Shown: piece by piece, positions 13,471-57,981 of the stretch
Layout: each line of letters begins with the position of its first letter
Numbering within the stretch: position 1 is the stretch's first letter
Assembly: GCF_035594765.1 (NCBI RefSeq)
Contig: NC_085846.1
Coordinates: forward strand, 20,509,190 to 20,573,189
Source: Anolis carolinensis
Lineage: Eukaryota
Reading direction: 5' to 3'
Length of the DNA stretch: 64,000 nt
Program-made: the position numbers and the translations under genes
Notes under the pieces: generated by a model
The model's input: the letters and a program-made list of their open reading frames with translations, nothing else
Database searches by the model: none
What the model was told of the DNA's origin: nothing

Positions 13471-14049
13471 GTGGTTGCACACACTATCAGCAATATTAGC
13501 AATCTGAGGTTGGATCTACACCATTAATATTATCCAGTTTCAAGTGCAAATCACCTGCATTGAATTAGATTATATGTGTCTACACAGTTCAATGTATTTA
13601 ATCTGCATTCTGAAACTGGATTGTATGGCAGTGTAGATCTAGCCTTAATCCAGAAAGTAAGGGTTTGCTTCCACAAATATACTGAATCAAACTGTACCAA
13701 GGCGCTTTGAAGAGAGTAATATAATTGATCAATACTATTTTTCTGCACCAGAAATGAAGGCTTAGGGCTTCGATAGCTTCATATGACTGTTAGAAATCTA
13801 TAACCGTCCTTGTGACTATGACTGACCTAAAACATTGTATTGCTTATGATGAAAAATAAAATGGAAGTTTCTTCCCATTCCACATAGAACTGCCATCTGG
13901 ACTGGTTGTTGTATATTTCTTTAATACTGGTGATGGGGTAGTCTTTCCCACTGTTTTGCTAAGGCAGTAAGTTAGCTAGGTTGGAGTGAAGTTCAGACTG
14001 TATGGCATAAGTCACTCTTTGAACATTTTACTATTGCATTTCAGTTTAT

Positions 14050-48452: not shown

Positions 48453-50209
48453 GAAAGTTGTGAAGAAAATAGTGGTTTATAACCTTTCTTAACATTCTAG
48501 GGGTTTCTCAATTGTTTTTGCCTTGAAAACTAATATTCCTGTCCCTTTCTTTCTGCCCTGTGGTATTTACTCTTCCGTATTTTTACTCTTTCTTTTGACC
48601 GCCTTAAAATTGTATACTTTAGCTTATAGGACTTACTCACTGAGATGATGGAAGAATTTTAGATGTTTGCTGCATTCAGGCATGTGGCTCATGATATGAA
48701 TGAAGGTAACACGTTTCCTGAATGCTTACACAGTCACTATTAAGCGTTGCTGTAGAAATGTCATTTGGGCTGCAATCTTACATTTGTTTATATGGAAGTA
48801 AGGCCCACTGAGTATAATAGGTTTTAATTTTTTATTGATGTGTAAACAATATTTGAGTTAATATGGAGATTTTTTTTTCTTGGGCACCTCACTTGGAGAA
48901 TTTTCAGGAATCACCAGTGTTTTTATTTTTCAAAAAATGTCAGAGAAGAGAGGAACTATGTATTGGTAGAAAATTGTTCCTTGAAGTAACAAAGTAAAAT
49001 TCTGGGTCTGGGATTTTATGAAGAATTAATTTTGTTTGCAGACTTTTTGATCCTGATATTCTTTAGTATATGCACATCTTTGTGATTTAGCCATGTTTGT
49101 GTAACAGATACAAGCATCGATTTTACCAGATTGAACGTTCTTCATTCTTCTTTCTGATTTTTTTTTCTGTTCCCCTTATTTTTTCATTTTTCATAACTTT
49201 TTCTTAGGTTTTATACATGTGACCACTGTGACATTTAAAGCTGTCTTAAGCCAAATGAGAGCATTGTTCTAGCAGGCGTAATAATACCTAAACTGACTGA
49301 CTAGATCTGCAATCAGATATCGTTTCCACCTTTACCTAAAAATCCAGGTAACTATTCTGAAACTTTTGTTTCAAATTCTATGATTTACTGTACTGTTGAG
49401 GTATTGTTCTTTCTTGCTTTATATATTGAAATAGTAAGTTACAATTTACGTTGTAACTCTTGATTTTCACTGCCAAATAATGATTTGATAATGACACTAG
49501 AATATTTTTCCACTGATGCTCTACAATACACCCATTGTCCATTCTATTATATGCATGTGTATGTCTTTTTTCTGAATAAGTCTGAAAGGGTATCTTATAA
49601 ACCTATGACATTAATTAGGGAAGCAAGTTGGTAGCATAAACTTCTGTAGACTTAAGTCTGCTTTATGAGTGCATTGAGTGAAGTTTCTGAGGACAAATCT
49701 TTATAGTCATTAAAGAGCATGTTAAATATGTAAAATTGCAATAAATGGTAAAACTTGTTGATATGGTGACAAATGCAGTATTGCTGCTGAAGGACAACAG
49801 CAGTAGAAACATATTGTCTAAAGCCAAGATGATACCAGCCATATGAAGTCTGTCTTCTTAATCAAGAAATATTATTTTTGAAGTCCTCAATCTGACTTCT
49901 TTTCCTTTTGGGTTCACTTTGGGTTAACCCAAATTCCCAAAACCTTGAACCTGCAAAGATCTCACAGAGAGTTAGAGCCTGGGAATGTTTTCTCCCAAAC
50001 AGTATACCCAGGCACTGTGCTTATTGCTATGCACATTGAACTATGCTTTTGGTCCTAAGTTTGAAATATTGCTTTAAATGAAGTAGAGGCAGGTTGTGTG
50101 TTGGTTATCATAACTATGAGAATAAAATGAAAAGCACTTTAAGTACTGCATTTCCATGTCTTTTATGGCTATTCTGACAACTGTTCATCTGCTTCCCTTC
50201 ACAGGCAAC

Positions 50210-51172
50210 ATGCATATTGAAGAGCAAAGGCCTATAAATAAATCCTCTCTGTCTGAGTTTATACTTCTGGAATTTTCAGAGGTTTGGGAGATCAGACTTT
50301 TGTACTTTGTGGCATTGCTTATTGTTTACCTGACAACAGCTGCAGGAAATATTCTCATCATCACTGGAATCATCTCTGACTATCGCTTGCATACCCCCAT
50401 GTACTTCTTTCTGATGAACTTGGCCATACAAGACGTGGGACAAGTTTCAGTCATTTTCCCAAAATCCATGGCCAATTCCCTCACGAACACTAGATCAATT
50501 TCTTATTGTGGATGTGTTGCTCAAGTTTTCTTTTATACATTCTTTGTAGCATCTGATTTTTCCCTTCTGACAGTCATGGCATATGATCGGTATGTTGCCA
50601 TTTGCAATCCACTGCAATATGAGATAGTGATGAATAGGCAAGCCTGCTTTCATATGGTTACTACTGTAGTGATTGTTAATTTGTTCTATGGAGTGTTGCA
50701 CACTGGAGGCACCTTTGCTCCCACCTTCTGCTCCAATGTTGTCAATCAGTTTTTCTGTGAACTCCCACACTTACTGAAACTTGTCTGTACTGACCTGTAT
50801 CTAGTTGAGGTTGGAGCTATTTTGCTCAGTGCTATGGTTCTATTTGGCTGCTTTGTTTTCATTATTGTGACTTATGTGCACATTTTCACTACAGTTATGA
50901 GAATGCCTTCTGTGCAAACAAGGCAAAAAGCTTTTTCAACTTGCCTTCCACACCTTATCGTTTGCTCTATATTTGTAGTTACTGGACTCTTGGCTTACCT
51001 GAAACCCACCTCTAATTCCCCAGCACATCCCGACCTTGCACTAGCAATGATTTATTCTATAGTTCCACCTTTGATAAATCCAGTAATTTATAGCATGAGA
51101 AATAAGGAAATAAAGTATGCTGTGAAAAAGCTACTGAATTTGAGGTTCAGAAGTCTAATTTTGCAAAGTTGA
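50210..51172 (+). CDS. Olfactory receptor (family 14-like), intact, 320 aa
   Basis: NKS sequon, LHTPMYFFL, MAYDRYVAIC, KAFSTC, PPLINPVIYSMRN; acceptor AG ends at 50204, first ATG at 50210. Confidence 0.95.
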   Translation: MHIEEQRPINKSSLSEFILLEFSEVWEIRLLYFVALLIVYLTTAAGNILIITGIISDYRLHTPMYFFLMNLAIQDVGQVSVIFPKSMANSLTNTRSISYCGCVAQVFFYTFFVASDFSLLTVMAYDRYVAICNPLQYEIVMNRQACFHMVTTVVIVNLFYGVLHTGGTFAPTFCSNVVNQFFCELPHLLKLVCTDLYLVEVGAILLSAMVLFGCFVFIIVTYVHIFTTVMRMPSVQTRQKAFSTCLPHLIVCSIFVVTGLLAYLKPTSNSPAHPDLALAMIYSIVPPLINPVIYSMRNKEIKYAVKKLLNLRFRSLILQS

Positions 51173-51614
51173 TTTCTCTCCATGACTGTACTTGTATACT
51201 ACCCTGTTTCCCCGAAAATAAGACAGGGTCTTATATTAATTTTTGCTCCCAAAGATGCACTAGGTCTTATTTTCAGGGGATGTCTTATTTTTCCATGAAG
51301 AAGAGCTCACATTTATTGTTGAACAACAAAATGAACATTTATTATATATTCTAAAGTAGTTGTCATCACAAACCAGCATAACCAGACAAACTATGAATCC
51401 TATCAAGAATTTCTTGTTACTACCATTATTTACATGTACAACAATGTCAGAACCCTGCTACTAGAGCCTGGATGTGGCTCTGAGTTTCAGGGTCACTGAC
51501 AGTGATAAGACACCTGCGTCCCAGGACTCGGAGGAGAAACGGCTGATGGACTTGGCGGGGAATTTGCGCGGGGTTTTACTGAGCGGGAAGAGACTGTTCA
51601 AATGAGGGGGAGGG

Positions 51615-51655
51615 TATATAAAGGAGGGTTGGCCGGAGCCTCCCATTCTTGGCTT
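51615..51655 (+). promoter_or_regulatory. LTR core promoter: TATA box and initiator
   Basis: TATATAAA at 51615; Inr-like CCATTCT with A at 51645, 30 nt downstream. Confidence 0.8.
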
Positions 51656-51749
51656 TTCTGATGTTCATGTTTCCTACAGTAAAAGTTCCTGGTGATACCA
51701 CAGAGAGTCTCGTGTGTTCATTCAGGAGCGGCTGTGGTGAGCTGACACT

Positions 51750-51760
51750 AAGCCAAGAAT
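51750..51760 (+). other. Self-priming primer-binding site
   Basis: AAGCCAAGAAT is the exact reverse complement of ATTCTTGGCTT (51645-51655), the predicted transcript 5' end. Confidence 0.85.
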
Positions 51761-51795
51761 ACGGACACCATCCCGCTGTAGCGGTGAGGTGTAAC

Positions 51796-54700
51796 ATGCA
51801 AGTGGAGGATGAAGAGCTCTTGGGCGCCGGAGGAGGAAGGTCGGAAAGGGCCACTCCCGAGACGGACGCTGAGTTCCACCAGCTGGCGGCCCTGGCGTCA
51901 TCCACCGCTTATGCCCAGCCAAATGGGGTAACCCAGAGGCGCGGAGTGGTGCGGGGAGATAGCACCGGAGGAGAGGAAGGTTCACCTTCCCCAGGCCCGC
52001 AAAAGATGGTGTTTCTGGAGGAGAGGATGTCGGCGATGGAGACCACCCTGGCAGTGATGTCGAGGGCGATGGAGCGCCTGGCGGTTTTGGCGGAGCCGGA
52101 GCGAGGAAGGGAACTCCGGGCTAGCTCAATGTGGGACGTGAGCATGGGAAGCAGCCAGGGCTTTGCAGACCTCCCAGCACCGAAGGGAAGGGAAATGCGA
52201 AAGGAGCCCGGTGCCCGGCCCAAGATCCAAACGAGCCTGACGCGGGTGGAGGAGAGTGACGACGAAGGGGAAAAGCCTCCGAGAATCCCGGCTACGCTCC
52301 CAACTGAGACCCTGGTGCCCCTGGCGAATGCCGGGCGTGGCACAGGACAAAGGGAAGCAGCAGCGGGGCCCACTGGCCCGCAAGGGGGCTTGCGACGGGC
52401 GGAGAATTGGGGATTGCCACCACAGGGACCCCTACCGAGACGAGAGGAACTAAGGATCGAGTTTGGGGGAGAGTCCTCTGAACTGGATTTTTTCCTGACC
52501 ACGGTGAGGGGCTATATGGAGGACAATGCCCACACTTTTAGAACGGAATCCAGCCGGGTACGGGCCATTGGTGCAGTGTTGAAGAGGGGAGCGGCCAGCT
52601 GGTACGTTCAACTACACGCGCGGCGCGACCCATGTCTGGGGTCACTCCGACGCTTTATGGGGGCCCTGGAGACCCGTTTCCGAGATCCACTGGAGCAGAT
52701 CCGGGCGAGGGAGGAGTTGAAGACCGTCTCCCAGGGGCAGAGGTCGGTATCTGAGTATGCGGAGGAGTTCCAATGCCTCGCTGAAAAGGTGCCGGAATGG
52801 TCTGCAGTGACAAAGATAGAACTCTTCAAAGAGGGGCTCAGGCGGGAGATCCTCTCCTGGGCGGTGCATCGTGATGAGCCTGACACACTGCGCGGATGGA
52901 TTCAGCTGGCGGGGCGCATCGAGACATCGCTGGCCCAGGCGAGGAGGCACCGAGGAGGGCTACAGCAGCGGCCGCAGATGAAAGAGGGGAGCCGGAAGGA
53001 GGGATCAACCCCAGCCGGGAGGAGAACGGAGCCGACAGGGAACGTGAGCACCAGCAGGAGGGGCTGCTTCGTGTGCGGCCGTTTGGGCCACAGGGCTGCC
53101 GAGTGCTGGCAGAGAAAAGGGGAAGGCGGAGGCCCGCCCAAACCAAGAGCCGTGGCAGGGAAACGCGCCGAGGAAGAACCACCGATGAGGCACCACTCGG
53201 GGGGGTTGGTAAGTCAGGACAAAGCCATGATAGTGGTCCCCATTCAGCTGGAAAGTGGCAGCAAACAAGCAACCTGCAAAGCATTTGTGGATTGTGGATG
53301 TTCCAGGAACATCATCTCCCCTGAATTAGCCGAGGGATTGGGGTGCGAAAGAACGAACCTAGAATCCCCAATAGCTTTTTCGCAGTTGGACGGATCCACA
53401 GCATCGGGATCATTAGCTAAGTACAGTGCCGAAGATGTAAAGTGTAAGATAGGGAGTTGGGAAGGAAAGGTGTCATTTGTGATATCACAAATAGCCAGCT
53501 ATAATGTTATACTAGGCATGCCATGGCTGGGGCAGGCCAACCCGCAAATCAACTGGGAGGATAAGAGCATGATCTTCAGGATGAAGTTGGAAGGAGGGAG
53601 CCAGGAAGTGGAAAGGGAGCCGGGGAAAAGGGGGGAGGAAGACTCTATCAGGATAGCAGAACTGGCAGATAAATTACCCCCAGAGTATCGGGATTTTGTG
53701 GACGTATTCGATGAGAAGGAAGCAGACAGTTTCCCACCGAAGCGGAGAGTTGAAGTGAAGATAGAGCTAGTCCCAGGAGCAGAGCTTCCTAAGGCAAAAA
53801 TATACCCAATGTCGGCTAGGGAAAAGGAGGAACTGAGAAAATACATTGATAAAAACCTAGCGAGGGGTTTCATAGAGCCTTCAAATTCCCCTCTAGGGGC
53901 GCCTGTGTTGTTCAGGCGCAAAAAGGACCAAACGCTGAGGCTCTGCATTGACTACAGGGGCCTGAATGCAATCAGTTCTGGAAATAAATACCCCCTACCT
54001 TTAGTGAAGGACTTGATCGCCCAGTTATCGGAGGGACAGATATTCACTAAATTGGACTTAATTGAAGCGTACCATAAATTGCAGATTAAACCAGAGGACA
54101 GGTGGAAGACGGCCTTCTCCTGTGCATTCGGATTATTCAATTATCGTGTGCTCCCTTTCGGTTTGTGCGGCGGAGGCGCCGCGTTCATGCAATTAATCAA
54201 CGAAGTGTTGCATCCATTGTTGTACAAGGGAGTCTTTGTTTTTTTAGATGACATATTGTTAGTATCTCGGACTAAGGAGCAACACATAGAACTAGTCAGG
54301 GAAGTCCTGCAAAAGTTGAGAGAAGCAAAACTGTATGCGAAGCTTGCCAAGTGCGAGTTCAATAAAGACCAGATAGACTTTCTGGGGTATAGGATTTCCT
54401 CCCAGGGAGTGGCGATGGACCCTGCGAAGGTAGAAGACGTGAGGGGGTGGGAAGCCCCCAAAACACGGAAGCAGCTGCAATCCTTCCTAGGGTTCGCAAA
54501 CTTCTATAGAACATTTATCAAGGACTTTGCGCGCCTCACTTTGCCATTAACGGATTTGTTAAAGACTAAAGGTAGGGGAGAAACAGCCAAAGTGAAGGCC
54601 CCAGGGGCCAAACTGACCTGGACAATAGAATGCCAGGAAGCTTTCGAAGCCCTAAAAAAGCGTTTTACTGAGGAGCCTGTCCTACAGCACCCTGATATGT

Positions 54701-56412
54701 CTAAAGCCTTTGTATTACATTGCGATGCGTCAGACCGGGCATATGGGGCAGTTCTGCTACAGAAAGACGAGGGGGGGAACCTGAAGCCATGTGGCTATCT
54801 GTCAAAAAAGTTTAGCGATACAGAAAAAAACTGGCCGATTTGGGAGAGAGAAGCCTTAGCGATTCTAAAAGCACTAGAGTGCTGGAGACACTTTCTGGAA
54901 GGAAGTGGAACACCGTTTGAGGTGTGGACTGACCATAGAAATTTACAGTATCTAAGATCCCCTCGTAAACTATCAGCGAAGCAAATTAGATGGGCCCAAT
55001 ATTTCAGCCGTTTTGATTTCAGACTCAGATTCTTCCAGGGGAAACATAATATACTCGCTGACGCTCTCTCTCGGATGCCTCAGCACGGGGGAGGAATTCA
55101 GGAATCTGAAGGGAGTATTTTTCTTGATAAGCAATGGGGCCTGGCAGTACTAACTCGAACACAAGCGGCCAAAGAAAACAAACGTACTGCCATTTCCACG
55201 GGGGGAGGAGAAATATGGGAGGAAGAGTTGAAGCGAGCGTATGGAATGGACAAATGGTTACAAACAAACAAAGAAAAGGGAGAATTGTGTGGGGATTTGG
55301 TGTTTGTAAATAAGAAATTGTATATTCCTGAATGTTTAAGACGAGAAATGTTAAGGAAGTACCATGATAACAAGGGTGCGGGTCATCTAGGCCCCACCAG
55401 GACTATTAAACTGTTGGCCAAACAATGCTGGTGGCCCGGAATGAGGAAAGACGCCAGGGGATACGTCACGCAGTGTGAATTATGTGCAGAGGGAAAAACA
55501 CCACCGGGGAAGCCCCAGGGGCTATTGCAGAAGGTGGTGGAGGCCATGAGGCCATGGGAATGCGTAGCCATGGATTTTGTAGGCGAACTACCCCCCAGCA
55601 GAGGCCACAGATACATTTGGACAATATTGGACCTATTCTCAAAACAGGCACACTTTGTGGCTCTGCCAAAACTTCCTTCAGCTGAAAAACTTGCTGATTT
55701 GTATGTGAAGCATGTATATCGCCTACATGGGTGTCCCGACAAGATAATTAGTGACCGGGGAGTCCAATTTACTGCAAAATTTTGGGGAAAATTCTTACAG
55801 CTGTTAGGAGCAGAAAGGAACCTGAGCTCGGCCTTTCATCCCGCGACCAACGGGGGGGTCGAACGTACCCAACAGACACTGTGCCAATTCTTAAGGATGT
55901 ACACCAATTATAGACAGGATGATTGGGCGGACCTTCTTCCGTTTGCTGAGATGGCTTTTAACGGGGCCGTACATTCGGCCACAGGTCGTGCCCCATTCGA
56001 AATAGTATACGGACAGGAGGTGGCACCTTTCCCCAGGCTACCCGAGTGGAAGGAAGGGGAGGGCCAGACCGACGAGGAATGGCCGGCCAAAATCAAGCAA
56101 GGGTGGCAAACCGTGGTAGAGGCATTGCGGGAAACACAAAAGAAGTACAAGCTCTTTGCGGATCGTAGGCGCCGAGAGGGGGACAAATTGGGCGAAGGAG
56201 ATCTGGTTTGGCTGAGCACAAAAAACCTGAAATTGGGGTTCCCATCCAAGAAATTGGCTCCACGCTATATAGGGCCATTCAGGGTAGCAAAAAGAATAAA
56301 CGAAGTGACCTATGAGCTGAGGCTACCAAAGGACCTAGGAAAGGTACACCCGGTATTCCATTGCAGCCTGTTAAAAAAGTATAAAGGAACTCTGGACAGC
56401 GGAGAACAATAG
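51796..56412 (+). CDS. Gag-Pol polyprotein (capsid, CCHC, protease, RT, RNase H, integrase; no chromodomain, no env)
   Basis: FGGESSELDFFL capsid-like start, CFVCGRLGHRAAEC, FVDCG, FLDD, CDAS/ERE/TDH/ADALSR, HHCC + MDF/SDRG/VER, GPF; start uncertain (in-frame ATGs also at 51661 and 51667). Confidence 0.95.
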   Translation: MQVEDEELLGAGGGRSERATPETDAEFHQLAALASSTAYAQPNGVTQRRGVVRGDSTGGEEGSPSPGPQKMVFLEERMSAMETTLAVMSRAMERLAVLAEPERGRELRASSMWDVSMGSSQGFADLPAPKGREMRKEPGARPKIQTSLTRVEESDDEGEKPPRIPATLPTETLVPLANAGRGTGQREAAAGPTGPQGGLRRAENWGLPPQGPLPRREELRIEFGGESSELDFFLTTVRGYMEDNAHTFRTESSRVRAIGAVLKRGAASWYVQLHARRDPCLGSLRRFMGALETRFRDPLEQIRAREELKTVSQGQRSVSEYAEEFQCLAEKVPEWSAVTKIELFKEGLRREILSWAVHRDEPDTLRGWIQLAGRIETSLAQARRHRGGLQQRPQMKEGSRKEGSTPAGRRTEPTGNVSTSRRGCFVCGRLGHRAAECWQRKGEGGGPPKPRAVAGKRAEEEPPMRHHSGGLVSQDKAMIVVPIQLESGSKQATCKAFVDCGCSRNIISPELAEGLGCERTNLESPIAFSQLDGSTASGSLAKYSAEDVKCKIGSWEGKVSFVISQIASYNVILGMPWLGQANPQINWEDKSMIFRMKLEGGSQEVEREPGKRGEEDSIRIAELADKLPPEYRDFVDVFDEKEADSFPPKRRVEVKIELVPGAELPKAKIYPMSAREKEELRKYIDKNLARGFIEPSNSPLGAPVLFRRKKDQTLRLCIDYRGLNAISSGNKYPLPLVKDLIAQLSEGQIFTKLDLIEAYHKLQIKPEDRWKTAFSCAFGLFNYRVLPFGLCGGGAAFMQLINEVLHPLLYKGVFVFLDDILLVSRTKEQHIELVREVLQKLREAKLYAKLAKCEFNKDQIDFLGYRISSQGVAMDPAKVEDVRGWEAPKTRKQLQSFLGFANFYRTFIKDFARLTLPLTDLLKTKGRGETAKVKAPGAKLTWTIECQEAFEALKKRFTEEPVLQHPDMSKAFVLHCDASDRAYGAVLLQKDEGGNLKPCGYLSKKFSDTEKNWPIWEREALAILKALECWRHFLEGSGTPFEVWTDHRNLQYLRSPRKLSAKQIRWAQYFSRFDFRLRFFQGKHNILADALSRMPQHGGGIQESEGSIFLDKQWGLAVLTRTQAAKENKRTAISTGGGEIWEEELKRAYGMDKWLQTNKEKGELCGDLVFVNKKLYIPECLRREMLRKYHDNKGAGHLGPTRTIKLLAKQCWWPGMRKDARGYVTQCELCAEGKTPPGKPQGLLQKVVEAMRPWECVAMDFVGELPPSRGHRYIWTILDLFSKQAHFVALPKLPSAEKLADLYVKHVYRLHGCPDKIISDRGVQFTAKFWGKFLQLLGAERNLSSAFHPATNGGVERTQQTLCQFLRMYTNYRQDDWADLLPFAEMAFNGAVHSATGRAPFEIVYGQEVAPFPRLPEWKEGEGQTDEEWPAKIKQGWQTVVEALRETQKKYKLFADRRRREGDKLGEGDLVWLSTKNLKLGFPSKKLAPRYIGPFRVAKRINEVTYELRLPKDLGKVHPVFHCSLLKKYKGTLDSGEQ

Positions 56413-56852
56413 TTGTGTTTAATCTTTTCCTTCCAGGACGAAGGGGAGGAGGACGCCATGTCAGAACCCTGCTACTAGAGCCTGGATGTGGCTCTGAGTT
56501 TCAGGGTCACTGACAGTGATAAGACACCTGCGTCCCAGGACTCGGAGGAGAAACGGCTGATGGACTTGGCGGGGAATTTGCGCGGGGTTTTACTGAGCGG
56601 GAAGAGACTGTTCAAATGAGGGGGAGGGTATATAAAGGAGGGTTGGCCGGAGCCTCCCATTCTTGGCTTTTCTGATGTTCATGTTTCCTACAGTAAAAGT
56701 TCCTGGTGATACCACAGAGAGTCTCGTGTGTTCATTCAGGAGCGGCTGTGGTGAGCTGACACAACAATCTATGGTACCTCTTGCAATTTAGGTTTCACAA
56801 GGTTTCCACACTGATTTCTCTCTATTCTAGTTTCAATGTAGTCATGAATGAT

Positions 56853-57422
56853 GAATAATATAATATACTATAATAATAATATGATAATATAATAATATAA
56901 TGATATACAATATATTAATGAGATAATATAATATAGGATATAATAATAACAGAAAATGATAATAATATGGTATTAATAGGATAATATAATAATGGGATAT
57001 AATAACAGAATAGCATAATAATATAATAATAATAGGATAATATAATAGAATAATAGAATGGAATAGAATGATATAAAATATATTAATAGGATAATATAAA
57101 ATGGAATATAATAATAACAGAATATGCTAATAATGATAATAATATGATAATATAATAGAATAATAGTATAAAATATAATGATATAAAATATATTAATAGG
57201 ATAATATAAAATGGAATAAAATAATAACAGAATAATAATATAATAATATGAAAATATAATAGAATAATAATAGAATAATAATATAATGATATAATAATAA
57301 TAGAAAAATATAATATAATGATATAAAATATATTAATAGGATAATATAATAATGGGATATAATAATAGTAACAGAATATGATGATAATAATATGGTAATA
57401 GAATAATAGTATAAAATAATAA
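56853..57422. repeat. AT-rich degenerate minisatellite (ATAAT/ATATAAT units) inside the MITE
   Basis: Directly visible; higher-order unit TATTAATAGGATAATATAA recurs four times. Confidence 0.9.
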
Positions 57423-57981
57423 GTTTCATGGCATAGGATAGGAATAAGGATGAGAGGAGAATCCCTATGTGTCCTGTACCTTTAAGAAGCAGAAAGAGCA
57501 GGATGAGTGGAAAGCCCTCTTCCTTCCCTCCCACCCTCCCTTGCCCTGGCTCAGGAGCCAATCAGAAGCCTTGGGGTGAAGGGAGCATGGCCAGGACGGA
57601 GCCTTGTCTCCAAAGGAAGAAACGGCAGCGCAGCAGCAGCCACGGAAGGTTTTTCAAGCCGCGTCTCTCCCTCCCTCCGGTGTGTATGAGTGCTGTTTTA
57701 GCCCTGCAGCCATGCTTCCCAATGGAACTCTGCTACAGCCTTAGTTGCTAGGTCTTACTTTCAGGGGAGGCCTTATATTTGGCAATCCCCCCAAACCCCT
57801 ACTAGGTCTTATTTTTGGGGAGGTCTTATTTTAGGGGAAACACGGTATTATTTATTTTGCTTATTTATCATATGAATTCTGGAAGGAATTGTAAATAATG
57901 AAACTTGTCAATATACTCTCAGAATAATTAACTTTCACCAGAAAAGAGAGAGAAAGAGAAAAAGCAGATGTGTGCAACATA

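What the first reader, a model, noticed from the sequence alone, without database searches (positions are those of the whole stretch)
53209..56436. Whole pol region of an intact Gypsy element looks like one spliceable intron (Gag made by splicing; spliced RNA keeps all cis elements)
Seen: gag and pol are one ORF with no stop or frameshift between them. A consensus donor TTG|GTAAGT lies at 53208/53209, after the CCHC knuckle and just before the protease, in phase 0. The short gap between the pol stop (56412) and the PPT is an acceptor: TTTAAT (branch-like), CTTTTCCTTC, CAG|G at 56436/56437. Joining the two gives ...HHSGGL-DEGEEDAMSEPCY* with the stop at 56476-56478 inside the 3' LTR, a Gag of about 484 aa from ATG 51796. 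Established: single-ORF elements need excess Gag; Drosophila copia obtains it by splicing, whereas Tf1 degrades Pol products and sushi/PEG10 use -1 frameshifting. Inference: this vertebrate Tf1/sushi-type lineage uses splicing. The spliced RNA would keep R-U5, PBS, PPT and U3, so it could be copied into ~2.09-kb gag-only LTR elements, a possible route to gag-only genes. I cannot confirm whether this has been described for this family.
Basis: partly seen in the sequence, partly recalled or inferred. Interest (0 to 1): 0.9.

Follow-up and report, generated by a model that had tools for sequence, protein, structure and literature searches.

The report
Lizard Gypsy element splices out pol
A young, intact Gypsy-type jumping gene of the green anole carries conserved splice signals that would remove all of its enzyme genes as one 3.2-kb intron, leaving an mRNA for the coat protein (Gag) alone, a trick so far described for copia-type elements of flies and plants.

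Summary
The window holds an intact 5,317-bp Ty3/gypsy element of Anolis carolinensis with identical LTRs, a target-site duplication and one 1,539-codon gag-pol ORF. It has one GTRAGT in its whole length, TTG|GTAAGT in phase 0 between the zinc knuckle and the protease. It also has its most pyrimidine-rich AG (CAG|G) 24 nt after the pol stop, right before the PPT.

All 7 loci I fetched are two-exon models with the 3,228-nt pol intron.

The same layout recurs in three more Anolis families and in a rattlesnake chromovirus (29% Gag identity). It consists of a phase-0 YTG|GTRAGT donor, an acceptor 19-36 nt after the pol stop, and a GC drop of 7-17 points from gag to pol.

Direct RNA proof is missing. 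Contigs of four public runs, whose RNA or DNA nature is unknown, show no such joint. No gag-only LTR copy was found.

The verdict is a copia-like "spliced Gag mRNA" strategy in a self-priming Tf1/sushi-type vertebrate lineage, likely real. I found no paper on it. This scan had already noted it on other copies of this genome.

The parts
51439..51444 (+). Target-site duplication, left copy (CAACAA; 5 or 6 bp)
   Evidence: Same hexamer at 56762-56767. Contigs of the uninterrupted flanking repeat run from 51445 straight into the sequence found after 56767 (loose ends at 51443-51445).
51445..51747 (+). 5' LTR (TGTCAG...CTGACA), 303 bp
   Evidence: 100% identical to 56459-56761.
51615..51622 (+). 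TATA box (TATATAAA) in the LTR
   Evidence: Read from the sequence. It lies 30 nt upstream of the self-primer. Its function is inferred.
51645..51655 (+). Predicted first 11 nt of the transcript (start of R), the self-primer ATTCTTGGCTT
   Evidence: Perfect complement of 51750-51760. The same geometry with different, covarying sequences occurs in five related elements.
51750..51760 (+). Primer-binding site of the Tf1 self-priming type (AAGCCAAGAAT), 2 nt after the LTR
51796..53208 (+). Exon 1 coding part: Gag (capsid plus CCHC knuckle at 53059-53106), 471 codons. An in-frame upstream ATG at 51661 gives the 529-aa RefSeq form.
   Evidence: Pfam hits Retrotrans_gag, Ty3_capsid and zf-CCHC. 99-100% identical to XP models P0001, P0002 and P0038.
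53206..53214 (+). 5' splice site TTG|GTAAGT, phase 0
   Evidence: Only GTRAGT in the element. Used by NCBI models at identical copies. Kept in 8 of 8 copies and as YTG|GTRAGT in 4 further families.
53209..56436 (+). Proposed 3,228-nt intron, covering the whole pol (PR 53269-53535, RT 53917-54396, RNase H 54619-55014, IN 55324-55842, SH3-like 56197-56385, stop 56410-56412) plus a 24-nt spacer
   Evidence: Pfam. Intron length equals that of the RefSeq two-exon models. GC is 47.9% against 63.1% in the gag exon.
56413..56436 (+). 3' splice region: branch-like TTTAAT (56418-56423), pyrimidine tract (56423-56434), AG (56435-56436)
   Evidence: Best pyrimidine score of 477 AG sites. An equivalent tract follows the pol stop in all relatives.
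56437..56478 (+). Exon 2 coding part: 13-residue acidic tail DEGEEDAMSEPCY plus stop, read across the PPT (56437-56458) into U3
   Evidence: Identical to the C-terminus of P0001, P0002 and P0038. The frame relative to the LTR start is kept in five Anolis elements.
56459..56761 (+). 3' LTR
56762..56767 (+). Target-site duplication, right copy

Best explanation
This is an active-looking Tf1/sushi-type Ty3/gypsy retrotransposon of Anolis carolinensis that expresses its genes from two RNAs. The unspliced, self-primed genomic RNA encodes a Gag-PR-RT-RH-IN fusion at a 1:1 ratio. A fraction of transcripts is spliced from TTG|GTAAGT (53208/53209) to CAG|G (56436/56437), which removes the whole pol. 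The resulting RNA of about 1.9 kb encodes Gag ending in a 13-residue acidic tail, with its stop in the last exon (in U3), so it should escape nonsense-mediated decay. Partial splicing would supply the excess of Gag over Pol that a single-ORF element needs, as in Drosophila copia. What is shown here: the sites, their uniqueness, their use in RefSeq models, and their conservation across diverged families. What is inferred: that the models rest on RNA-seq introns, that splicing is partial, and that its role is to set the Gag:Pol ratio.
For: (1) Anatomy. (2) Independent gene models. XP proteins of A. carolinensis (P0001 529 aa in a cluster of 89 sequences, P0002 414 aa in a cluster of 8, P0038 and P0044 484 aa) end in ...HHSGGL|DEGEEDAMSEPCY. 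At L001 and L006-L011 the CDS spans 4,818 or 4,683 nt, which is two exons with a 3,228-nt GT..AG intron in full-length copies 99.4-99.8% identical to the window. (3) Conservation. A second A. carolinensis family (L002, L005; Gag 64% identical), two A. sagrei families (L003, L004; 53-54%) and a Crotalus tigris chromovirus (L015; Gag 29%, Pol 48%) all have a single gag-pol ORF. Each has a phase-0 donor YTG|GTRAGT (ATG|GTGAGT in the snake) in the otherwise unconserved NC/PR linker, and a pyrimidine tract plus CAG|G 19-36 nt after the pol stop, before the PPT. The models of the Anolis families use both sites; the snake model uses the donor. (4) Nucleotide-level constraint. The Ser codon after the donor is AGT in 5 of 5 families although AGT makes up 11-23% of their Ser codons (product 6e-5). 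GTRAGT is unique or nearly so in each element. (5) The gag exon is 57-63% GC and the pol intron 42-50% in all six elements. (6) In all five Anolis elements the distance from the junction to the LTR start is 1 mod 3, so the PPT is always read in the acidic frame, while intron length mod 3 varies.
Against: I obtained no read that crosses the junction. Logan contigs of four runs (X1, X6, X10, X13) cover the whole element, and two of them run straight through the donor, but no 53208>56437 joint is listed. A rarer 1,032-nt deletion joint at roughly 15-25% of the local depth was listed. If those runs are RNA, the spliced form is a minority there. If they are DNA, they say nothing about RNA. Gnomon models are predictions and I could not see their evidence. 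One expressed copy, or protein-to-genome transfer between annotations, could have spread one model over many copies. Val-Ser after the junction could also be a protein constraint. A T-rich box before a purine-rich PPT is common in retroelements and mimics an acceptor by itself.
Confidence: 0.7

Rival explanations
1. Splicing happens but is not the element's own strategy. The host spliceosome recognises a strong donor and a PPT-adjacent acceptor by accident, and this wastes or disarms transcripts. The Gag:Pol ratio would then be set as in Tf1, by degradation of Pol products.
For: The element is Tf1-like in other respects, with a single ORF and self-priming. No abundant joined form appears in four runs. 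The snake model joins the same donor to an exon 6 kb beyond the element, which looks like opportunistic use.
Against: An accidental, harmful donor should be lost. Instead the hexamer, its phase and the AGT codon persist over 29-64% Gag identity, and the reading frame of the tail is kept in five Anolis elements.
Confidence: 0.15
2. There is no splicing. The motifs are conserved for other reasons (Leu-Val-Ser at a protease site or the PR N-terminus; a T-rich box that helps PPT priming), and the RefSeq models are prediction artefacts kept because Gag-only products escape the pipeline's transposon filter.
For: No junction contig. No Logan-derived protein with the joined tail (weak, because short ORFs of this region are not in that collection at all). 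Ensembl/UniProt models of the same family (P0003, P0055) do not use the intron.
Against: A predictor without intron evidence has no reason to skip 3.2 kb of open, coding-like frame to add 13 codons. The same junction logic appears in separate annotations of three species and four or five families. Codon-level conservation goes beyond the amino-acid level.
Confidence: 0.1
3. The spliced product is not bulk structural Gag but a modified Gag, whose acidic tail replaces the natural PR-cleaved end. It would act as a regulator, for example a copy-number control or dominant-negative factor like Ty1 p22, or a factor in RNA export or packaging choice.
For: The tail is short and acidic, and its frame is kept in five Anolis elements. 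Ty1 p22 and Cer1 CERV are precedents for extra element-encoded products from subgenomic or spliced RNAs (PMC4551931 abstract; PMC10309623).
Against: The snake relative would get only a 4-residue, non-acidic tail. The acidity follows automatically from reading a purine-rich PPT in one of three frames.
Confidence: 0.05

Closest known systems
Drosophila copia (Ty1/copia): 2-kb spliced gag mRNA
   Same: Single gag-pol ORF. A roughly 3-kb intron removes almost the whole pol. The spliced RNA encodes Gag only and keeps both ends of the transcript. The presumed purpose is an excess of Gag (Yoshioka et al. 1990, as cited in PMC5580714 and PMC3735527).
   Different: A different superfamily: here the order is PR-RT-RH-IN, with a Ty3/PEG10-type capsid and self-priming. 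The host is a vertebrate. The acceptor sits between the pol stop and the PPT, so the tail is read across the PPT into U3. Splicing is not yet shown experimentally here.
Plant Ty1/copia elements: BARE1 (barley) and EVD/shGAG (Arabidopsis)
   Same: Alternative splicing near the protease yields a Gag-only subgenomic RNA. Splice sites are conserved among families and the introns have host-intron-like composition (PMC3735527, PMC5580714).
   Different: BARE1 removes only 104 nt and creates a frameshift. EVD couples splicing to premature termination, so the short RNA lacks the 3' LTR. Here the spliced RNA keeps the PPT and U3-R. PMC5580714 saw no such conserved splicing in Arabidopsis Ty3/gypsy elements.
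Tf1 (S. pombe) and the vertebrate Tf1/sushi group
   Same: Ty3/gypsy domain order and a single gag-pol ORF. An 11-nt complement between the transcript start and a PBS 2 nt after the LTR (self-priming; PMC6317226 citing Butler 2001 and Lin & Levin 1997).
   Different: To my own knowledge, Tf1 gets its Gag excess by degradation of Pol products. No pol intron is described for it. The window element has no chromodomain hit.
sushi-ichi / PEG10-type -1 ribosomal frameshifting
   Same: Related Gag (Pfam PEG10_N-capsid/Retrotrans_gag; NCBI names some relatives 'PEG10'). It solves the same Gag:Pol problem. One relative found here (L012) has a gag stop, a U_UUA_AAC heptamer 21 nt before it, and PR in the -1 frame.
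   Different: The window element has no stop or frame change between gag and pol.
Other spliced Ty3/gypsy RNAs: gypsy/ZAM/Bagy2 env, Ogre and CRR introns, Cer1 cerv
   Same: Ty3/gypsy elements that use host splicing to make a second product (PMC3735527 discussion; PMC10309623).
   Different: Those splices create env, join ORFs or make a regulator. None removes pol to make Gag alone.

Membership tests
Ty3/gypsy (Metaviridae) LTR retrotransposon | Pol domain order PR-RT-RNase H-IN | tested here: met
   Pfam hits in that order on 53209-56409. Same order in L002, L004 and L015.
Ty3/gypsy (Metaviridae) LTR retrotransposon | Two LTRs (TG...CA), a target-site duplication, and a Gag with capsid and CCHC knuckle | tested here: met
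Tf1/sushi group | Self-priming: the PBS is complementary to the first ~11 nt of the transcript instead of to a tRNA | tested here: met
   51750-51760 pairs with 51645-51655, which lies 30 nt after the TATA box. There are 11-12-nt complements with covarying sequence in five relatives. Cleavage and priming themselves were not tested.
Tf1/sushi group | Chromodomain at the integrase C-terminus (chromovirus) | tested here: not met
   No Chromo hit in the window element, L002 or L004. It is present in the snake relative L015 (PF00385, E 6.5e-10). Some lineages may have lost it, so membership rests on self-priming and Gag/Pol similarity.
Tf1/sushi group | Placement inside the clade on an RT/IN tree | not tested
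   No tree with reference elements was built.
copia-type 'spliced subgenomic Gag mRNA' expression strategy (a mechanism, not a clade) | Single gag-pol ORF with a donor at the end of gag and an acceptor that leaves a Gag-only ORF | tested here: met
copia-type 'spliced subgenomic Gag mRNA' expression strategy (a mechanism, not a clade) | The spliced RNA is actually present in cells | tested here: inconclusive
   RefSeq models use the junction. No joint appears in contigs of four runs of unknown library type.
copia-type 'spliced subgenomic Gag mRNA' expression strategy (a mechanism, not a clade) | Gag protein in excess over Pol because of the spliced RNA | not testable with these tools
   This needs protein and RNA quantification.
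Ty1/copia superfamily | Integrase placed before RT | tested here: not met
   Integrase is last. The element works like copia but is not a member.
PEG10/sushi-ichi -1 frameshift type | A gag stop codon, a slippery heptamer and pol in the -1 frame | tested here: not met
   One uninterrupted frame. The feature is present in relative L012.

The most novel reading that the evidence does not exclude
Both the self-primer/PBS (exon 1) and the PPT-U3-R (exon 2) survive splicing. The Gag-only RNA could therefore be a fully competent template that is occasionally packaged and reverse-transcribed into 2.09-kb LTR-gag-LTR elements. That would be a ready-made route by which sushi-type gag genes (of the PEG10/RTL/PNMA-like kind) first became free of pol. 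It also implies that these elements must have an unknown way to keep spliced RNA out of particles.
Probability: 0.12. Interest if true: 0.8.

Novelty: new variant of a known kind. Interest (0 to 1): 0.6.

Why it matters
Single-ORF retroelements must make far more Gag than Pol, and only a few solutions are known: frameshifting, readthrough, Pol degradation, and splicing in Ty1/copia. A conserved pol intron in vertebrate Tf1/sushi-type Gypsy elements would be a convergent reinvention of the copia solution in the lineage that gave mammals PEG10 and the RTL genes. It would explain why roughly a hundred 'uncharacterized protein' genes in the anole RefSeq annotation are really one transposon isoform. 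It also poses a clear question: how does an element whose subgenomic RNA keeps every known cis signal for reverse transcription avoid copying it? The family is young (identical LTRs, copies over 99% alike), so it is experimentally tractable.

Tried and rejected
(1) Read laying on X1, X6, X10 and X13 found no 53208>56437 joint. The runs are only guessed to be RNA. The LTR:internal depth ratio of about 3-6 and the 0.81-0.83 word share, both uniform across four studies, fit low-coverage DNA at least as well. I therefore count the result neither as proof of silence nor as proof that retrocopies are absent.

(2) Contig ends near the donor (X6 records 26 and 27 at 53210/53181) and near the acceptor (X1 record 7 starting at 56435) looked like splice branches. 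Each is one base off from what the junction would give. I read them as copy polymorphisms and not as evidence.

(3) I searched for intron-blind (Logan) proteins with the joined tail, using the C-terminal region of P0002 and an 80-residue piece. One search returned only NCBI and UniProt entries and nothing. This is uninformative, because not even unspliced short ORFs of this region are in that collection.

(4) The gecko (Paroedura picta) Gag-only models P0071, P0075 and P0096 (L013, L014, L016) are not the same thing. They are contiguous gag ORFs ending in a real stop, the L014 intron is N-terminal, and L013 is an internally deleted element.

(5) Genome contigs holds only bacteria and archaea, so no genome-wide search for 2.09-kb copies was possible.

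(6) The resemblance between the LTR-encoded tail of L002 (..GLNFQAL..) and the Gag end of L012 (..PLNFQSL..) uses different codons. I treat it as chance.

The exons were handled by reference, and the junction was examined only through database proteins and read laying. I built no consensus of the copies.
Full report
**What is there.** The window comes from Anolis carolinensis. Its Gag is 99-100% identical to RefSeq proteins of that species, and the whole element is 99.4-99.8% identical to loci of assembly GCA_035594765.1.
- At 51445-56761 lies a 5,317-bp LTR retrotransposon with two 303-bp LTRs that are 100% identical, flanked by CAACAA on both sides.
- It inserted into a high-copy repeat about 270 nt downstream of an olfactory-receptor gene. 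Contigs of the uninterrupted repeat bridge the insertion site (loose ends at 51443-51445).
- One ORF runs from ATG 51796 to the stop at 56410-56412 (1,539 codons).
- Pfam finds a Ty3/PEG10-type capsid and a CCHC knuckle, then protease, RT, RNase H, integrase (H2C2, rve) and a Tf2-type SH3 domain, but no chromodomain.

**The observation.**
- TTG|GTAAGT at 53208/53209 is in phase 0, 34 codons after the knuckle and about 20 codons before the protease. It is the only GTRAGT in the element.
- The 24 nt between the pol stop and the PPT read TTGTGTTTAATCTTTTCCTTCCAG|G. By a simple pyrimidine count this is the best of 477 AG sites in the element, and the donor is among the 5 best of 244 GT sites.
- Exon 2 in phase 0 encodes DEGEEDAMSEPCY, with its stop 17 nt inside U3.

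**Independent support 1: gene models.** A search with the Gag part alone returned NCBI Gnomon proteins of A. carolinensis of 529, 484, 414 aa and shorter.
- The two 90%-identity clusters hold 89 and 8 distinct sequences.
- I fetched seven of the loci (L001, L006-L011). All are full-length 5,317-bp copies in which the CDS is two exons around a 3,228-nt GT..AG intron at the homologous positions.
- The 529-aa form starts at an in-frame ATG at 51661 inside R-U5.
- From my own knowledge of the NCBI pipeline, a model that skips 3.2 kb of open frame is unlikely without RNA-seq intron evidence. Gag-only products also pass the pipeline's transposon filter, whereas Gag-Pol products do not. I could not inspect that evidence.

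**Independent support 2: conservation.**

| Element | Host | Gag identity to window | Donor | Pol stop to acceptor AG end | Exon-2 tail |
|---|---|---|---|---|---|
| window | A. carolinensis | - | TTG\|GTAAGT | 24 nt | 13 aa, acidic |
| L002 | A. carolinensis | 64% | TTG\|GTGAGT | 23 nt | 35 aa, acidic |
| L005 | A. carolinensis | 63% | TTG\|GTGAGT | 19 nt | 27 aa, acidic |
| L003 | A. sagrei | 53% | TTG\|GTGAGT | not comparable (pol frame broken) | 23 aa, acidic |
| L004 | A. sagrei | 54% | CTG\|GTGAGT | 24 nt | 31 aa, acidic |
| L015 | Crotalus tigris | 29% (Pol 48%) | ATG\|GTGAGT | 36 nt | GALW |

- Gag-only models of the second A. carolinensis family and of the two A. sagrei families map the same way. 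Each has a phase-0 donor in the NC/PR linker, a pyrimidine tract plus CAG|G shortly after the pol stop, and an exon 2 read across the PPT into U3.
- These are young, mostly intact elements with read-through ORFs of 1,500-1,606 codons and LTRs 99.5-100% identical. L003 has a premature stop.
- L015 is a 6-kb chromovirus with a single 1,531-codon ORF. It carries a TGTCTCTGTTTCATTTCAG|G tract before its PPT. The NCBI model there uses the donor but joins it to a distant exon outside the element.
- The Gag residues upstream of the donor are not alignable between families, yet the nine nucleotides are kept.
- Even if Val-Ser were needed at the protein level, the Ser codon is AGT in all five families against an AGT share of 11-23% among Ser codons (product 6e-5).
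- The gag exon is 7-17 GC points richer than the pol intron in all six elements.
- In the five Anolis elements the junction lies 22, 25, 28, 52 and 52 nt before the LTR, always 1 mod 3, so the PPT is always read in its acidic frame. Intron length mod 3 varies over 0, 1 and 2.

**What is missing.**
- The runs offered for this stretch are all Logan contigs whose type is only guessed. In four of them the element is fully covered. A 4,924-nt contig (X1) and a 662-nt contig (X10) pass straight through the donor, and no 53208>56437 joint is listed. A 1,032-nt internal deletion at about 15-25% of the local depth is listed.
- Whatever these runs are, an abundant joined form, whether RNA or DNA, is not in them. 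Contigs drop rare variants, so a minority isoform is not excluded.
- I found no intronless copy (0 of 7 loci), and I had no means to search the whole genome.

**Family and mechanism.**
- Eleven nucleotides placed 2 nt after the 5' LTR (51750-51760) are the exact complement of 51645-51655, which lies 30 nt after the TATA box.
- All five relatives show the same geometry with different, compensating sequences. This is the self-priming arrangement described for Tf1 and the vertebrate Tf1/sushi group (PMC6317226).
- It fixes the probable transcript start at about 51645.
- A more distant relative from a Logan contig (L012) instead has a gag stop, a U_UUA_AAC heptamer and the protease in the -1 frame. 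The lineage therefore contains both solutions to the Gag:Pol problem.

**Comparison with what is known.**
- Splicing that yields a Gag-only RNA is established for Drosophila copia, barley BARE1 and Arabidopsis Ty1/copia elements. The Arabidopsis study found no such conserved pattern in Ty3/gypsy elements (PMC5580714, PMC3735527).
- Known Ty3/gypsy splices make env, join ORFs (Ogre, CRR) or make a regulator (Cer1 CERV; PMC10309623).
- Six full-text searches found no report of a pol-removing intron in a vertebrate Gypsy element. A survey of metaviral capsid genes that included the anole does not mention it (PMC11011659).
- The case is therefore a new variant of a known kind. It is implicit in RefSeq annotation but, as far as I can see, not recognised.
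- This scan had already flagged the same feature on at least seven other copies of this genome, and two follow-ups reached the same reading. I re-tested their claim of conservation in other lizards and a snake. It holds for A. sagrei and Crotalus tigris. It did not hold for the three gecko loci I examined.

**Verdict.**

| Item | Assessment |
|---|---|
| Observation | confirmed |
| Splicing to make Gag | likely (about 0.7 as the element's own strategy; about 0.85 that the junction is used at all) |
| Gag-only retrocopies | anatomically possible but unsupported |

Noticed in passing
window 51645-51655 and 51750-51760; L002, L003, L004, L005, L015: Tf1-type self-priming signature: an 11-12-nt perfect complement between the predicted transcript start (30 nt after the TATA box) and a site 2-3 nt after the 5' LTR. 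The sequence covaries across six elements of two lizards and a snake.
   Followed up: partly
window 53597-54630 (run X6): A contig joins 53597 to 54630 (GA..GA ends; skips 1,032 nt, which keeps the frame) at about 35 depth against 140-260 around it. It points to an internally deleted PR/RT-less derivative of the family in that sample.
   Followed up: no
window 51445-56761 against run contigs (tables 1 and 3): Where the window copy differs from the dominant contigs, window-A/contig-G sites (11-15 per run) far outnumber window-T/contig-C sites (2-7). This strand-asymmetric G-to-A pattern in this copy would fit cytidine deamination of the minus-strand cDNA.
   Followed up: no
window 51661-51795: An ATG inside R-U5 is in frame with gag and open through the PBS, which gives the 529-aa RefSeq form. 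Copies L010 and L011 are shifted by one base relative to the window and carry the 484-aa model instead; whether that shift is what removes the upstream start was not checked. Which start is used is unknown.
   Followed up: partly
L012 1380-1600 (Logan contig of SRR28863755): A relative with the classical arrangement: the gag stop is preceded by U_UUA_AAC and the protease is in the -1 frame. A GTG|GTGAGT motif still sits about 50 nt after the gag stop. The gecko element L013 likewise has TTG|GTGAGTC about 45 nt after its gag stop; L016 has none.
   Followed up: partly
L015 3731 and 13700-13756: The rattlesnake RefSeq model joins the element's gag-end donor to a 3-codon terminal exon about 6 kb beyond the 3' LTR. 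The transposon donor is thus read as part of a chimeric host transcript.
   Followed up: no
window 50156-51172 (+): An intact olfactory-receptor ORF (338 aa; Pfam 7tm_4, E 2e-40) ends about 270 nt before the element.
   Followed up: partly
window 56830-57425: An AT-rich minisatellite-like block directly downstream of the element, with about 97- and 110-nt units built of ATAATA-type short motifs (families D1 and D2).
   Followed up: no
window 56435-56487 (X1 record 7): K-mers spanning the PPT/3' LTR border have about 3.6 times the depth of the pol region in run X1. More molecules carry PPT plus LTR than carry pol. They could be truncated or deleted derivatives or a sister subfamily. It is not the splice, because the gag contig shows no matching branch.
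   Followed up: no
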